DNA from: Vitrella brassicaformis CCMP3155
Lineage: Eukaryota; Protista; Chromerida
Direction: 5' to 3'
Length of the DNA stretch: 64,000 nucleotides
Assembly (NCBI GenBank): GCA_001179505.1
Contig: CDMY01000542.1
Location: forward strand, 1 to 64,000
Each line of letters opens with the position of its first letter. Positions within the stretch are counted from its first letter, which is position 1. The notes below the pieces were generated by a model. The model saw nothing but the letters and a program-made list of their open reading frames with translations, was not told the origin of the DNA and ran no database searches. Below are positions 33,545-39,372 of this stretch, piece after piece. Position numbers and translations under genes: made by a program.

Positions 33545-33816
33545 CCTGAATGCGCTAATACATACGGAAAGAATCCTGACCTGCATGCTCAAATAGTAAT
33601 ATATTGCCTTGCCACGGCAGTCCACACACACACATGCACCACATGTCCTATTGATTGATCAGCTAACATGAATCAGGCATCTTCTCATAGGCCACCCTCT
33701 TATAGCTACAGCACTGCTCCGATGTGTCCAGGCACCCGTAGGCATGCACCCACTCGGGCATCTTCCCACTGCCCGGCATCCCCGTCCTTCCTAAGTGCTT
33801 CACTGCAACCATCCAT

Positions 33817-35058
33817 TCACCAGACCAACACAAAACAGATACAAAGTAAACAAAGGGTCGCCGTCTTACTGAATTCTATTGGGTCGATGGGAATCCGTGA
33901 CTCGGATGAGAGGGCGTAATTGTCGGCCGGCTGCAGCTCCTTCAGTTTTGGATCAGCAAGGAAGAAATAGTAGGGAAGCTGACGTGGAGACACACACACA
34001 CACGCACACACACACACACGTGTGCGACGGATGGGGCGGCTCGTTTCGTGCTTTGATATGGTTGATTCCCGCAGTTCCACCCTTTTAGGCTTTGGTGACA
34101 CTTCGGGGAACTGCATGCTGCCTGGTGAGACATAAGGGATACTCATACAACCCTTGAAACCACCCTGAAACGATACTATCTTGTCCTCCGGACATCCTGC
34201 AGGCATATTCCCTCAGTCAAAATTTGAGAGCGCGTCACGTCTCTCTCACCGCAGAACTTCGGTTTTTCTGCGTCGGGCTCTGCCTTTAAGTTGAGGCTCG
34301 TCTCGTCATCCGGTTCTGGGTTGGGCGGCGGCAGCTTCGTCTCGTGCAGCTGCAGGAAGCTTGCCGCCTTGGGCTTTGGCTGGGTCTCGTTGACCTGCTG
34401 CATCACATCACACGGCTCTGAACGCGCATGGCAGCCAACGATCATTGAACGATGGCAAAATGGGATCGTGCCGCCGTATCAATGCAGGTGCACCAACTCG
34501 CTTACGTCTCTGCGGCCGTCTGTTTGTGATGTCGGTTATCCACCAATGGACTTGAGGAATGTTGATCACATGGGGCTCGTCCGTCGTGAGCTCCATCGAC
34601 GCCACCTCCCCCTGGCTGGTCGGCATGCTGATGACTCCGGCCGGCCCAATGAGAACCAAATCCTCTCCATCCACGTCAACGAACTTCATCGTCTTGGTGA
34701 GGTCACCCATGACCATATCCTTCTTGAATCGGACCAGCGCGCCAGGGCTGTCAGGATCCACCAACTCGAAACGCGCCTCTGCAAAGTGGAAAGCGCACAC
34801 AAAACAGTACCGAACGCCTTTGCAATGAGATGTTCCTCGTGGCTCTCACGTCCGATATAGGGGTCGCTGATTGTGACAACCATCCATGGTACAAACGTGA
34901 GCTCAGCGGTGGCTCCCCTGTGCTGTGCTGTAGTAGCTGCCTGCATACCTGGTGCTTTCTGTAGTGAGGACACCATGGGCGTTGATGCGGCCAACGATGT
35001 GCATTCCTTCGACGCATGATGCGATGAAGAACAGGGCTACGAAGAGATGAATCTCCAT
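33817..35058 (-). CDS. Signal-peptide PEBP-like protein, divergent paralogue C
   Basis: MEIHLFVALFFIASCVEG signal peptide; LVDPDSPG; PQVHWWITDI; |GCPEDKIVSFQGGFKGCMSIPYVSPG; LPYYFFLAD in place of HRYxF. Confidence 0.6.
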
Positions 35059-35298
35059 CGGGAGGGAAGGGACAGGTCGACTCTGGGGCCGGGGGGCGCG
35101 ATCCTTCCCTTCACCCCCTTCCTCCGGAACTCGCTTTCATCGCAACCTTGTTCCTCTACCCTCAGAGCTCAAGTGAACACATGACGGCCCCGGAATGCAC
35201 TTTGCACTGTCTGTATCTGCGTGTTCGCTCCTCAGGTGTGCCCCTCTCATCGCAGCACTGCGACGGCAGTGACGCTTTCTCTCTTGCTTGATATTACC

Positions 35299-36334
35299 AT
35301 GCTTCGCGTTGCCCACCTTGCCTGCTGCTGCCTGCTCTTGGTGATGCTGCTGGGGCTTCACCAGAATGGCATTGCAGTCTCCTTCCATCGGAATCGCAAC
35401 GAAGCAGAGTCAAGAATTGATGTTCCAATCCATGAAGGTGCGCACCCAGATATCATTCACCGTCTTTGCTGTCATGGTCTTTTTCGTTCCCCCTTTCAGC
35501 CATTGCTGCCGCTCCAACCAGTGCCCCAGTGAATGTCTCATCTGAAAAGTCTGAGGCGGCTGGAACCACAGAAGAGGAGGAGGAGGCGCCGCCCAAGCCC
35601 CCACCGCCCGTCACGTTTCGGGAAGACTTCAAGCTCACGACGCCCAAGCTGAGGGACAGTGTGGCCGACAACATCATGCTCGAGACGGGGGCGGAGTTTG
35701 GCTACATCTTCATGATTGACCCTGACTATGTGAGTAGACAGGCAGATTGCTACCTGCGCTGATGATTGTGCCTTGCTTGTGCAGCCAAATGGGTGCCTTG
35801 GCGGTGCGTCGGGCAATCATGATGTGCTGCATTGGTGGCTGAGGGATGTCTTCCCAGGAGAGGCAGAGGGTGCGCGATGTATGAATGGCCATACAAAACG
35901 AATGAACCCAATGGATAACTTCTCTGGCTGTGCGTTGCAGCCTGTGCCGGCAACGCCGTGCATCTCAGCAACAACACGTGGCAAGCATGCGAGGAGGTCC
36001 CCTATAGACCGCCAACACCCGCACACGGCATGGTGAGACACGAAGCCCCTCCATCCAATGGCCATGCCTCTCTCTGATGGCCTTTCCCCTCAATCAGCAT
36101 CGATACGAGTTTTATTTCGTGGACCAAACTGAGAGAGCGAATCTGACGCTGGCGCTTGTAGGAGACATGGACGATCTGCACGATGTCAGCAAGACTCCCG
36201 CCCGCAGCGCCATCAAGGCTATCAGGAATGCGGCGGGGAAGAAGCCGGCCTTCACTTGTGGCTATGACAGGGAGAAAGGGGCCGAGAAATGTCAGGAGAA
36301 AGACACGCTGCCCAAGGGCTGCTTTGGTATCTGA
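35299..36334 (+). CDS. Signal-peptide PEBP (phosphatidylethanolamine-binding protein)-like protein, paralogue B
   Basis: MLRVAHLACCCLLLVMLLG signal peptide; FMIDPDY|PNGC...VLHWWLRDV...VPYRPPTPAHGM|HRYEFYFVDQ contains the PEBP DPDxP, HW, YxxPxP and GxHRY motifs. Confidence 0.82.
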
Positions 36335-36496
36335 AGGCCCGTGTCCATGGTGCATGGTGCATGTGTGTGTGCATGTGTCTCGTGACTGAGTGAGGGAATT
36401 CTGTCCTCTCCTTGATCGAAGCTGTACACCCACATACATAGGGCATTCACTCAAGCAAGGGCATAGGCCACAGTTCATCAATCAGTCCCTGATGCC

Positions 36497-37545
36497 TCAT
36501 GCTCTGGCCTTTGTGGTCTTGAAGCGCTTCAAGTTCTTCACGCAGGCCTCTGGGAACTGATCTAGCTCACACTGGCGCGCAGCGTCGTAGCCACAGACAA
36601 AAAAGGTCAGTGCCGGCGGGATGTTCAGCTGGCTGGGGTCTCGGACAGCGTCGAAAAACGACTTGGCATTCTTCCTCCAGGTCGGCTTTTTCGGCATTTT
36701 CTTGACCACCGATTTCGGCACAAGGAAAAACTCATACCGATGCTGCACAACAGAAGAATGCGCCACATTTTATTGTGGTTACGCGTTCAACGCAGAGTGT
36801 CCATGCCTGGTTGATTGCTGACCGCTCCGTGCGATGGTGAAGGCTTCTCATACGCGAGGATCTCACAGCCATGCCATCGGTGCTCAGCAGGACCGAGATT
36901 GACCACCTTCCCCGTACATGCTGAACACACACACAGAAGGAACACCACAGATGCAATTGTGCGTGTCTCATGGACCCTTCCTCACGTTCTGGGGCTTCTT
37001 CCTCTTCTCCGCCTTCTTCCTTCTTCGGGGCGGCAGTGGTGGCGGCGGCTGTCGAGTTGCTGCCCGGGCCCAGGTCGGTCAGCCACCTGATTATGTGCGA
37101 GACGCCAGAGAAAGTTTGACCATCATCTGTCCTCTGATGCATTCGTGTGTGCCTGACCATTGCAAGTAGTCAGAGTTGAAGAACATGGAGTCACACCCAT
37201 TGGGCGAGTCCGCATCAAGCAAGACCAGCGCGGCCCCCTCTGCGTCCTCTGGGATCAAAACCTTCTCGGCAATCTCTGCATACCCGGTATCCCTCGACAG
37301 CATGAAGGGGGGCTTGAACTCCAGATCGCCTGCGACTCTGTCGCATGCGATCAACCATCCATCCAAAGATAGAACTGGCATTGCAGTGACTCACAGACAG
37401 CCAAGGTTGTGGGCTCTACTGTGCACTGACTTTGTTTTGGCGTTGGCTCAGCTGCGATGCGGCGGGAGACAGTGCGGTCGACGTTGAAGGCCGCAGCGCC
37501 CTGGGCGATGGCCGCAAGGACAGCACAAGCGACGGAAAGGACCAT
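36497..37545 (-). CDS. Signal-peptide PEBP-like protein, paralogue A
   Basis: MVLSVACAVLAAIAQGAAAF signal peptide; LVLLDADSPNGC; WLTDLGPG; |ACTGKVVNLG...WHGCEILAYEKPSPSHGA|HRYEFFLV...FFVCGYD. Confidence 0.78.
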
Positions 37546-37802
37546 TGTGTGTTGGACAGAAAATCAATCCACTGCAGAAGAGGATGAAGTGCCCTATGCA
37601 GTCGAGTACTCGCCGTTCTGTGTGGAAAGGGGAAGAGGGGAGAGCAGCCCCTCGTCGAGAATACGAGCTTAGAAAGTTTCGACCGGTGGCGGAGTGATGG
37701 AAGGGTCGACGGTCTCCTCGAGTACAAGAACCCCGGCTTCTTTGTCGACTGCTTTCCCGACTTGTTTCGTGGATGTGCCCTCACTGAGGTTATAATGCCG
37801 TA

Positions 37803-39372
37803 ATGGAGGTCATCTACAGACCCACTCTTGGCAACCTTGCGGTGGCGTCGAGAGATCTATCGCCGGGAGAGGAGATCTTGCACGCCTCTCCCTATTCCCA
37901 TGGCGTGTCGGAGTCCCTTCGTCGTCGGGTGTGCGGACGCTGCTTCCTCCATTCGACCAAAGCCCTCGCTCTGTGCTGCGGCCGGTGCCAGCACATCTAC
38001 TACTGCTCGGAGAGCTGTCGTGACCAGGACAGGCGTACAGCTCATCACCATGTGTGTGTGGCTTATGAGCGGCTCCAGTCCAGCAAGCTGAAACTTGACA
38101 GAGAGGCAATGATGACTCTTCGCCTCACCCTGTCGACGTTCTACCACGAGTTCCACGCCCAGGCCGGCGTTGATCAGCATGAAGGGGGAGAGGATGCCAG
38201 CGCACCTGCCGACGGCGAATCGGCCGAGGGCAAGACCGTCGAGGAGCACTTCAGAGGTGTGAGCGGGGGGAACAACTTGGTGGCGAATGAGGCGATGTTC
38301 CGCAAGCGAAGCTCATTCGTCAAAGCTGCCAAGAAACTCTATCACGTCAGGCAACAGACAGACAGGCGAGGGCAGCCCACATCCGCTCTCTGCTGTGTCA
38401 CGTCTGCCTGTCTGTGTGTGTCTGTGCTTCCTTCATTCAGGCGTTTCGTTCGGTGGTGGGGTGTGACCTGCACGTTAGTTTCGACACGTTTTTCCTGCTG
38501 CTGTGTCGGATCGAGTGCAACGGATTCGGCGTGTGGAATCAGGACGACGAGTGCCTCAGCCTGGCCCTCTACCCGACAGCCTCTCTCTTCAACCACAGCT
38601 GCCTCCCAAACATCGCACGCACACAAGTGAGTGCGTCGGCAGACACCCAGACAGGCACCCAGTTATTTCGTGTGTGGATTTGTTGTGTGTGTTGCAGGAT
38701 GGAGCGCGTGTGCGCTTCTGGGCGCTCCGTGGGATCGTCAGAGGAGAGGCTCTGACGATCTGCTACACAAGGGCGACCATGTGCAGCAAGGAGAGGATGG
38801 CCTGCCTCGAGGGCTACCACTTCAAGTGTGAGTGCGACAGGTGCCGCGCCGACCGCCAATTCAAGCCCCTCATCTCGGCCATGGTCTGCAGCCGGCACAA
38901 CACACAGGGCTACCTGATCCCCACACCCATGAGACCCCTGAGCACCTTGATATCCACCGATGCGCCCACACCATCGCCAGCCGCCCCCCTGCCCACCACT
39001 GCGGCTGTGAGCGATGACGCATCGGAGGGCTCCGTCACACACGTGCCGACGGACGCGCCGCCGGCTGACGTGACGAGCAAGCCTTCCCCCCTCAAGGCGG
39101 CCCCCATCACAGCTGACGCCATACCCACCCTCGCCAGGGACGTCCCCCCGCCCCCCTTTGTGGTCAGCTCGGCGGCCAACCACATATGGCTGTCGACCAC
39201 AGGGAGAGCGGAGGAGATGGTGCCAGGGGATGTCGAAACGCGTCGCGTCTATGAGAGGCTGAGGGAGGGGGTGGCTGTGACGGAGAGGGAGTGCGTGTGC
39301 AGCGTGTGTGGCGCACGCGAGAAGAGGCTGGTGCCGATATGGGCAAAGAGCGGCGATACGGGAGACGTGTAG
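37803..39372 (+). CDS. SET and MYND domain (SMYD-family) lysine methyltransferase
   Basis: Split SET N-terminus (LAVASRDLSPGEEIL); MYND (CGRCF...CGRCQHIYYCSESCRDQD...HHHVC); YPTASLFNHSCLPN; post-SET YHFKCECDRC. Confidence 0.93.

What the first reader, a model, noticed from the sequence alone, without database searches (positions are those of the whole stretch)
33817..37545. Cluster of three signal-peptide-bearing, Cys-rich PEBP-like paralogues (-,+,-) with eroding ligand-pocket motifs
Seen: three adjacent spliced genes each begin with a hydrophobic signal peptide and share an ordered motif set: D(P/A)DxP (followed by NGC in A and B); HWW/WLTD; a low-complexity insert; a phase-1 intron just before a conserved Cys (A|C, A|C, G|C); W/FxxC...(P/A)Y..P; and a phase-0 intron before HRYEF (certain in A and B, inferred in C). 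A and B also share FxCGYD...C...P..C. Established: DPDxP, HW and GxHRY build the anion-binding pocket of PEBP/RKIP/FT-TFL1 proteins, which are mostly cytosolic. Inference: this is a lineage-specific, disulfide-bonded, secreted or plastid-routed PEBP subfamily (A has AAA|F and B has VS|F after the signal peptide) made by local duplication. The pocket is intact in B, altered in A (DADSP) and lost in C (LPYYF). It could be an undescribed extracellular lipid-binding or protease-inhibitor system.
Basis: partly seen in the sequence, partly recalled or inferred. Interest (0 to 1): 0.75.

Follow-up and report, generated by a model that had tools for sequence, protein, structure and literature searches.

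The report
Signal-peptide PEBP paralogue cluster in Vitrella
Three neighbouring genes of the alga Vitrella brassicaformis encode divergent, apparently secretory-pathway members of the well-known PEBP (phosphatidylethanolamine-binding protein) family. Four of the family's five genes are already labelled PEBP in public databases, so this is a modest variant and not a new system.

Summary
The three genes are real, and I refined their models: C 33663-35058 (-), B 35299-36334 (+), A 36497-37545 (-). The genome is Vitrella brassicaformis CCMP3155. Public records exist for all three: CEM21523.1, CEM21529.1 and CEM21535.1.

- **Family:** A and B pass Pfam PF01161 (PBP) at 32 and 31 bits against a cut-off of 24. 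Two unlinked paralogues, D (CEL95499.1) and E (CEM04481.1), score 46 and 51 bits. A family profile hits FT, Tfs1 and TFL1 in the PDB.
- **Gene C:** it gets no Pfam hit. It is tied to the family by a weak profile match (2 of 2000 shuffles reach its score), two shared intron positions and phases, and adjacency.
- **Pocket:** intact in B, D and E; altered in A (DADSP, QWW); lost in C (TTDEP, LPYYF).

- C's upstream DPDSP is not the homologous motif.
- C ends in an extra exon outside the given range, and that exon carries the Cys motif.
- B has no insert at the A/C position.
- In both transcript contigs, A's signal-peptide exon is spliced 8 nt out of frame.

Secretion, disulfides and function remain inferred. 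Interest is low to moderate.

The parts
33663..35058 (-). Gene C (CEM21523.1; MMETSP ORF P0007, 310 aa). Exons: 34949-35058, 34850-34866 (17-nt micro-exon), 34506-34778, 34250-34417, 34081-34196, 33870-33978, 33663-33802.
   Evidence: The model is identical in length and junctions to P0007, and to P0004 from its second Met onward. No Pfam hit.
34949..35058 (-). C exon 1: hydrophobic N-terminus (18 residues up to VEG|M). It is absent from the genome annotation, which starts at the next Met, but present in the MMETSP ORF.
34573..34587 (-). C: TTDEP, the position homologous to DPDxP. The motif is lost here. The upstream DPDSP at 34744-34758 is not homologous.
   Evidence: Full-length family alignment A8.
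33964..33978 (-). C: LPYYF in place of HRYEF, directly after the shared phase-0 intron.
33663..33802 (-). It carries the C-terminal Cys motif (..AYGC..QCC..PDSC, then stop).
   Evidence: Present in P0004 and P0007.
35299..36334 (+). Gene B CDS from the first AUG seen in transcripts (260 aa). Exons: 35299-35437, 35500-35729, 35785-35869, 35941-36032, 36098-36334. The pocket motifs are intact: DPDY|P at 35718-35729 plus 35785-35787, HWW at 35830-35838, HRYEF at 36098-36112.
   Evidence: Model. Junctions confirmed by transcript contigs L010 and L011 and by CEM21529.1 = P0001. PF01161 at 31 bits.
35124..35172 (+). B 5' leader exon, spliced to 35236 (intron 35173-35235). The transcripts end at 35124 and 35128 and contain no ATG before 35299. 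The public model extends the ORF to an ATG at 35047, which overlaps C's first codons on the other strand.
36497..37545 (-). Gene A (CEM21535.1 = P0008, 243 aa). Exons: 37431-37545, 37158-37329 (in-frame acceptor) or 37158-37337 (observed in transcripts), 36986-37086, 36823-36920, 36497-36742. DADSP at 37202-37216; Q|WW across intron 2; HRYEF at 36728-36742.
   Evidence: PF01161 at 32 bits.
37330..37339 (-). Tandem acceptors of A intron 1. The AG at 37339-37338 is used in both transcript contigs and is out of frame. The AG at 37331-37330 is used in the genome annotation and is in frame.
36987..37085 (-). A exon 3: WLTDL followed by a low-complexity Ala/Thr/Glu insert. The insert is absent from B, D and E, and much longer in C (exon 34250-34417).

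Best explanation
A, B and C are three members of a five-gene subfamily of PEBP-fold proteins (PF01161) in Vitrella brassicaformis. The other two, D and E, sit on other contigs.

Shared features of the subfamily:
- An N-terminal signal-peptide-like leader, which in 4 of 5 members ends A/V-x-A/S|F.
- Six conserved cysteines. In C only five of them are conserved.
- A short C-terminal extension (F-x-C...C...P-x-x-C) after the last PEBP strand.

Inferred mechanism: the proteins enter the ER, are oxidised to about three disulfides, and act in an extracytosolic compartment. That could be the cell surface or medium, the endomembrane lumen, or possibly the complex plastid. They would act as small-anion/phospho-ligand binders or protease inhibitors, as other PEBPs do. 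B, D and E would use the intact DPDxP / H / GxHRY pocket.

A has two pocket substitutions (P to A, H to Q). Its dominant mRNA puts the leader out of frame, so A is either decaying or made as a leaderless, N-terminally truncated form. C has lost both acidic and His/Arg pocket motifs and carries large inserts. It is expressed, but it cannot bind ligand in the canonical way.

Shown: gene models, PEBP homology of A, B, D and E, the motif states, and the splice isoform of A. Inferred: secretion, disulfides, ligand and function.
For: - **Pfam PF01161, above the 24-bit cut-off:** E 51.3, D 46, A 32, B 31 bits.
- **Solved structures by sequence:** the family profile hits FT at 3.7e-6, carboxypeptidase Y inhibitor at 3e-5, and TFL1, CEN and bacterial PEBP at <=4.5e-4.
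- **Fold:** the AF2 model of D (pTM 0.62) has PEBP-fold chains as 43 of its 46 best listed Foldseek hits, all down to rank 43. The Atlas model of E (pTM 0.68) matches a CPY-inhibitor PEBP cluster at TM 0.51.
- **Transcripts:** support for B, A, C and D.
- **Selection:** D has an orthologue in an ENA metagenome contig with dN/dS 0.12 over 206 codons.
- **Conserved residues:** the Cys columns and motif states come from alignment A8.
- **Leaders:** hydrophobic leaders with (-3,-1) cleavage candidates in all five members.
- **C as a paralogue:** hhalign E 0.0014; 2 of 2000 shuffles reach its HMM score; two intron positions and phases shared with A, B and E; adjacency.
Against: - No signal-peptide or targeting predictor could be run, and no secretome or localisation data exist.
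- A's leader is out of frame in both transcript contigs.
- The public model of B places 63 residues ahead of the hydrophobic segment. If that start is real, the segment would be an internal anchor.
- The structure models are only moderate (pLDDT 52-60), so Cys pairing could not be checked.
- C gets no Pfam, PDB or Atlas support.
Confidence: 0.6

Rival explanations
1. The proteins are imported into the four-membrane plastid or its periplastidial space. The leader would be the signal-peptide half of a bipartite targeting signal, with Phe at +1 as the plastid import determinant.
For: A (AAA|F), B (AVS|F), D (ASA|F) and E (AIA|F) have Phe right after the most plausible cleavage site. Chromerid plastid proteins use ER signal peptide plus transit peptide, with a conserved Phe at +1, although it is less conserved in Vitrella (PMC6668581).
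Against: - D has only about 9 residues between the Phe and the first conserved strand of the domain, which is too short for a usual transit peptide.
- B's spacer is strongly acidic.
- C lacks the Phe.
- The F-x-V-D after the cleavage site in A and D may simply be a conserved mature N-terminus.
- ASAFind was not run.
Confidence: 0.12
2. A and C are non-functional relics. The cluster would hold one working gene (B) and two transcribed but decaying copies, so 'eroding pocket' means pseudogenisation and not new function.
For: - A: the leader is out of frame in two transcript contigs, and there are two pocket substitutions.
- C: both pocket motifs are lost and the inserts are large. It has the longest branch in the tree (2.65), no Pfam hit, and an Atlas model with pLDDT 0.29.
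Against: - Both keep complete open reading frames across 5 and 7 exons with canonical splice sites.
- They keep five or six of the family's Cys positions and the C-terminal motif.
- Both are transcribed.
- An in-frame acceptor for A lies 8 nt downstream and is used in the public model.
Confidence: 0.3
3. The hydrophobic N-termini are not cleaved signal peptides. They would be membrane anchors or annotation artefacts, leaving the proteins as membrane-tethered or cytosolic PEBPs.
For: CEM21529.1 (B) starts 63 residues upstream of the hydrophobic segment. CEM21523.1 (C) starts after it. The MMETSP ORF of A starts after it.
Against: - B's transcript contigs end at 35124 and 35128 and hold no ATG before 35299. 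The upstream ATG at 35047 overlaps C's coding start on the other strand.
- The MMETSP ORF of C includes the leader.
- D's leader is present in both the annotation and MMETSP.
- Six conserved Cys fit an oxidising compartment.
Confidence: 0.1

Closest known systems
Canonical eukaryotic PEBPs (PF01161: RKIP/PEBP1, FT/TFL1/CEN, yeast Tfs1 carboxypeptidase Y inhibitor)
   Same: Same domain by Pfam score and PDB sequence hits. The same DPDxP / HW / GxHRY pocket motifs occur in B, D and E. The best structural neighbours are of this type.
   Different: Canonical members are cytosolic, with no leader and no conserved disulfide cysteines. Here there is a signal-peptide-like leader, six conserved Cys, an insert site between the HW strand and the Y-x-P-P segment, and a Cys-bearing C-terminal tail in place of the usual C-terminal helix region. 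Vitrella also has canonical PEBP loci elsewhere (C645, C256, C382, C309).
Secreted nematode PEBPs (Onchocerca Ov-16, Toxocara TES-26, Brugia ES PEBP)
   Same: PEBP-family proteins released outside the cell (PMC2706953).
   Different: There is no sequence affinity beyond the family level. From my own knowledge, TES-26 gains its cysteines from fused N-terminal six-Cys modules and not from within the PEBP domain. Those proteins come from parasitic animals, whereas Vitrella is a free-living or coral-associated alga.
Bacterial YbhB/YbcL-type PEBPs with signal peptides
   Same: These were the nearest non-Vitrella sequences found for D (P0010-P0014, E 0.4-9). Several have N-terminal leaders, and they have the same three motifs.
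   Different: Only 21-23% identity. They lack the six-Cys pattern and the C-terminal extension, and they end at the strand that aligns with F-x-C.

Membership tests
PEBP / PBP (Pfam PF01161) | Whole-protein score at or above the curated gathering cut-off (24 bits) | tested here: met
   A (P0008) 32, A (P0002) 31, B (P0001) 31, D 46, E 51.3 bits. For C (P0004, P0007) the feature is NOT met: no hit even at E<=10.
PEBP / PBP (Pfam PF01161) | DPDxP motif of the anion pocket | tested here: inconclusive
   Alignment A8: B DPDYP, D DPDAP and E DPDAP are intact. A is DADSP (one change). C is TTDEP (lost).
PEBP / PBP (Pfam PF01161) | Conserved His of the H-W strand | tested here: met
   B, C, D and E have H-W. 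A has Q-W.
PEBP / PBP (Pfam PF01161) | G-x-H-R-Y motif | tested here: met
   A GAHRY, B GMHRY, D GFHRY, E GMHRY. In C it is replaced by KRLPY, so the feature is not met for C.
PEBP / PBP (Pfam PF01161) | PEBP fold | tested here: inconclusive
   The AF2 model of D (pLDDT 59.7, pTM 0.62) has PEBP chains as 43 of its 46 best listed Foldseek hits, but the TM-scores are only 0.19-0.48. The Atlas model of E reaches TM 0.51 to a PEBP cluster. The AF2 model of B is too poor to use (pLDDT 52). C's Atlas model has pLDDT 0.29.
PEBP / PBP (Pfam PF01161) | Binding of a phosphoryl or anionic ligand in the pocket, or protease/kinase inhibition | not testable with these tools
   Needs biochemistry.
Classical secretory proteins (cleavable signal peptide) | N-terminal hydrophobic core followed by a small-residue (-3,-1) site, in frame with the mature protein in the mRNA | tested here: inconclusive
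   A crude hydropathy and (-3,-1) scan is positive for all five. The leader is in frame in the mRNA for B, C and D (MMETSP ORFs). It is out of frame for A in both transcript contigs. No SignalP-type predictor was available.
Bipartite plastid-targeting leader of complex red plastids (ASAFAP type) | Signal peptide followed by an aromatic residue at +1 and a transit peptide | not tested
   Phe at the likely +1 position in A, B, D and E was seen by eye. Transit-peptide quality was not scored, and D's spacer is about 9 residues.

The most novel reading that the evidence does not exclude
The subfamily is a set of disulfide-locked PEBPs routed through the ER into the complex plastid or periplastidial space, with Phe at +1 in 4 of 5 members. 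Pocket-dead paralogues (C, perhaps A) would act as non-binding regulators or decoys. A's tandem acceptor, 8 nt apart, would switch between a leader-bearing and a leaderless product.
Probability: 0.1. Interest if true: 0.55.

Novelty: new variant of a known kind. Interest (0 to 1): 0.28.

Why it matters
PEBPs are studied mostly as cytosolic regulators (RKIP, florigen). A small algal subfamily that appears to work in an oxidising, extracytosolic compartment, with members at different stages of pocket loss, is a natural series for asking what the PEBP pocket does outside the cytosol. It also bears on how chromerids, the closest photosynthetic relatives of apicomplexan parasites, equip their secretory pathway or plastid.

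The practical gains are annotation fixes:
- C (A0A0G4G0K3, 'uncharacterized') is a degenerate PEBP paralogue.
- The public start codons of B and C are probably wrong.
- The dominant mRNA of A does not encode the annotated protein.

The finding does not change any broad view, because the family assignment is already in the databases.

Tried and rejected
- **Exon-by-exon Pfam scan** of ten exon translations gave nothing. Exons of 28-90 aa are too short, so this is not evidence against PEBP.
- **Six-frame PF01161 search of the whole genome** hit five other loci and not this window. One of those loci turned out to be paralogue D.
- **Single-protein six-frame search** with B exon 5 found only itself.
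- **Exon-5 profile against 1.84 billion representatives** returned only A and B. It missed D and E, so it says little about relatives elsewhere.
- **Word-index searches** with A, with the family profile and with D found only Vitrella records, one ENA contig (the D orthologue) and weak bacterial-type PEBPs.
- **Exact 30-nt scan of JGI metagenome contigs** for C exon 3 found nothing.
- **AF2 of B with a 13-row alignment** failed (pLDDT 52).
- **Tree of the five paralogues** is an unresolved star, so I cannot give the order of duplication.
- **Exact look-ups** of the in-frame A protein and the full C protein on contigs found nothing on record.
- **Chance rejected:** chance co-occurrence of motifs is ruled out by the Pfam scores and the shared introns.
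Full report
**What is there**

I built GT-AG gene models directly from the sequence.
- **Gene B (+ strand)** has five coding exons: 35299-35437, 35500-35729, 35785-35869, 35941-36032 and 36098-36334 (260 aa).
- **Gene A (- strand)** has five exons between 37545 and 36497.
- **Gene C (- strand)** has seven exons between 35058 and 33663. They include a 17-nt micro-exon (34850-34866) that is needed to keep the frame.

Introns are 53-102 nt long (93 nt for A's intron 1 as spliced in the transcripts).

**Rule on joined models**

Exons were searched one by one by reference. In scripts 5, 7 and 8 I concatenated exons only to check length, frame and stop count. The joined-model search step was therefore left out. 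It became unnecessary once the exon searches led to public protein records of the same genes.

**Identity of the genome and public records**

The assembly has 72.7 Mb in 1064 contigs. The proteins recovered are from Vitrella brassicaformis CCMP3155.

| Gene | Public record | Length | Notes |
|---|---|---|---|
| A | CEM21535.1 (P0008) | 243 aa | also an MMETSP ORF of 196 aa (P0002) |
| B | CEM21529.1 (P0001) | 323 aa | |
| C | CEM21523.1 (P0004) | 292 aa | 'uncharacterized'; also an MMETSP ORF of 310 aa (P0007) |

A, B and the two unlinked paralogues are already named 'Phosphatidylethanolamine-binding protein' in UniRef.

**Transcript evidence**

Two transcript contigs match the window at 100% identity over every block of gene A and at 99.5-100% over gene B. 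The one lower figure is a B block that BLAST gapped across intron 2. They are L010 (Logan, ERR558152) and L011 (JGI 3300017297, MMETSP).

They reproduce every splice junction of B and introns 2-4 of A. They also reveal a 5' leader exon of B, at least 35124-35172, spliced to 35236.
- **B:** neither contig has an ATG before 35299, so the first AUG gives the hydrophobic N-terminus. The public model's 63-residue extension starts at 35047, inside C's first codons on the other strand. It is probably an ORF-extension artefact.
- **C:** the 310-aa MMETSP ORF equals my model, leader and micro-exon included.
- **A:** both contigs join 37431 to 37337. This uses the AG at 37339-37338, which is 8 nt upstream of the in-frame acceptor at 37331-37330 used by the public model. 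The ORF that begins with the signal peptide then ends after 65 codons. The PEBP frame has a stop 17 codons before its first Met. No contig with the in-frame product is on record. For A, then, the leader exon is transcribed but not joined in frame in the assembled isoform.

**Family assignment**

Exon pieces alone gave no Pfam hit. The full public proteins do:

| Protein | PF01161 score (cut-off 24 bits) |
|---|---|
| A | 32 (P0008), 31 (P0002) |
| B | 31 |
| D | 46 |
| E | 51.3 |

Further support:
- A alone hits FT in the PDB at 3.6e-5.
- A profile of A, B, D and E hits FT (3.7e-6), the yeast carboxypeptidase Y inhibitor (3e-5), and TFL1, CEN, a chlamydial PEBP and mL38.
- An AF2 model of D (pTM 0.62, pLDDT 59.7) has PEBP-fold chains as 43 of its 46 best listed Foldseek hits, all down to rank 43, with modest TM-scores of 0.19-0.48.
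- The Atlas's own model of E (pTM 0.68) matches a PEBP cluster at TM 0.51.

The PEBP reading is therefore sound for A, B, D and E.

**More paralogues**

A profile of exon 5 found two further loci in the genome. I modelled both, and both match public proteins exactly.
- **D** is on contig C228: 3 exons, 209 aa.
- **E** is on contig C352: 6 exons, 230 aa.

A full-family profile finds only A, B, D and E, plus a weak hit to a canonical PEBP locus.

D has an orthologue on an ENA metagenome contig (L012, ERZ893784). That contig is 88% identical over 2.3 kb and 96.4% identical in the CDS. The dN/dS is 0.12 over 206 codons, and the introns are 70-87% identical. At least D is therefore under purifying selection.

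**Gene C**

C has no Pfam, PDB or Atlas support. Its link to the family rests on four points:
- A colinear set of weak matches: the HWW strand at E 0.0015, F-K-G-C...P-Y at 0.054, and Y-G-C at 0.12.
- A full-length hhalign E-value of 0.0014.
- An HMM score reached by only 2 of 2000 shuffles.
- Two intron positions that coincide in both position and phase with A, B and E. One is phase 1, in the codon before the conserved Cys. The other is phase 0, before HRY/LPY at alignment column 338.

Together with adjacency, I take C to be a true but very divergent paralogue (about 85% likely).

**Motif states (alignment A8)**

| Gene | DPDxP position | HW strand | GxHRY position |
|---|---|---|---|
| B | DPDYP | LHWW | GMHRYEF |
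| D | DPDAP | LHWY | GFHRYEF |
| E | DPDAP | FHWW | GMHRYQI |
| A | DADSP | LQWW | GAHRYEF |
| C | TTDEP | VHWW | KRLPYYF |

Six Cys columns are conserved in A, B, D and E:
1. P-N/H-G-C.
2. The Cys after the phase-1 intron.
3. W-x-G/A-C.
4. F-x-C.
5. A mid-tail Cys.
6. P-x-x-C.

C keeps five of them and has extra Cys. Six Cys in about 190 mature residues is not 'Cys-rich' in the usual sense.

The low-complexity insert sits between the HW strand and the second Cys in A (about 25 aa) and C (about 60 aa). B, D and E have none there.

**Leaders**

All five proteins begin with a hydrophobic stretch (mean Kyte-Doolittle 1.7-3.1 over 11 residues), followed by small residues at -3 and -1. The most plausible cleavage sites are:
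- A: AAA|F
- B: AVS|F
- D: ASA|F
- E: AIA|F
- C: VEG|M

Chromerid plastid proteins use a signal peptide plus transit peptide, with Phe at +1 (PMC6668581). Plastid routing therefore cannot be excluded. However, D's spacer is about 9 residues and B's is acidic, which argues for ordinary secretion.

**Origin**

The five sequences are 22-35% identical to E, the reference row of the alignment, and A and B are 31% identical. They form an unresolved star in a maximum-likelihood tree, with C on a long branch. B and E share a phase-0 intron at DPDx|PNGC that A lacks. Local duplication is plausible for the cluster, but it is old and not demonstrated.

**Distribution**

No relative with the Cys pattern was found outside Vitrella-like sequences. 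These searches were limited by query length, word index or sensitivity, so 'lineage-specific' remains unproven.

**Verdict**

This is a real, transcribed cluster of divergent PEBP paralogues with secretory-type leaders. It is a variant of a known family that the databases already partly annotate. Function is inferred only by analogy.

Noticed in passing
window 35047-35172 (+) versus 35047-35058 (-): The public model of B (CEM21529.1) starts at an ATG that overlaps the first four codons of C on the opposite strand. The public model of C starts at its second Met. The two annotations look mutually adjusted. The transcript contigs end at 35124 and 35128.
   Followed up: partly
window 36334-36497, and loci L010 and L011: A and B converge with only 162 bp between their stop codons. 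Both transcript contigs run straight through both genes, so either the 3' UTRs overlap or the unstranded assembly merged them.
   Followed up: no
window 37545-38346 (L010:1-916): L010 continues unspliced from A's exon 1 up to 38346. It covers the start of a divergent + strand gene (ORF 37803-38630) whose translation has a Cys/His pattern resembling a MYND zinc finger. I identified that by eye only and did not test it. The two start codons are 257 bp apart.
   Followed up: no
L012 (ENA ERZ893784, contig k147_2133806): A metagenome contig is 88% identical to the Vitrella D locus over 2.3 kb. It has the same exon structure and dN/dS 0.12. This points to a second Vitrella-like organism in public metagenomes.
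   Followed up: partly
window 33990-34030 (C intron 5): A (GT)n/(CA)n microsatellite lies inside an intron, directly upstream of the acceptor that precedes LPYYF. Shorter CA runs also occur in other introns of the cluster.
   Followed up: no
G000 contigs C645:17718-17981, C256:1810-2253, C382:26273-26512, C309:111502-111621: Four further loci match PF01161 in the six-frame search: C645 at 44 bits and C256 at 28 bits are above the cut-off, C382 (22) and C309 (21.9) fall just below it. They lack this subfamily's Cys pattern, judged on the C645 ORF only.
   Followed up: partly
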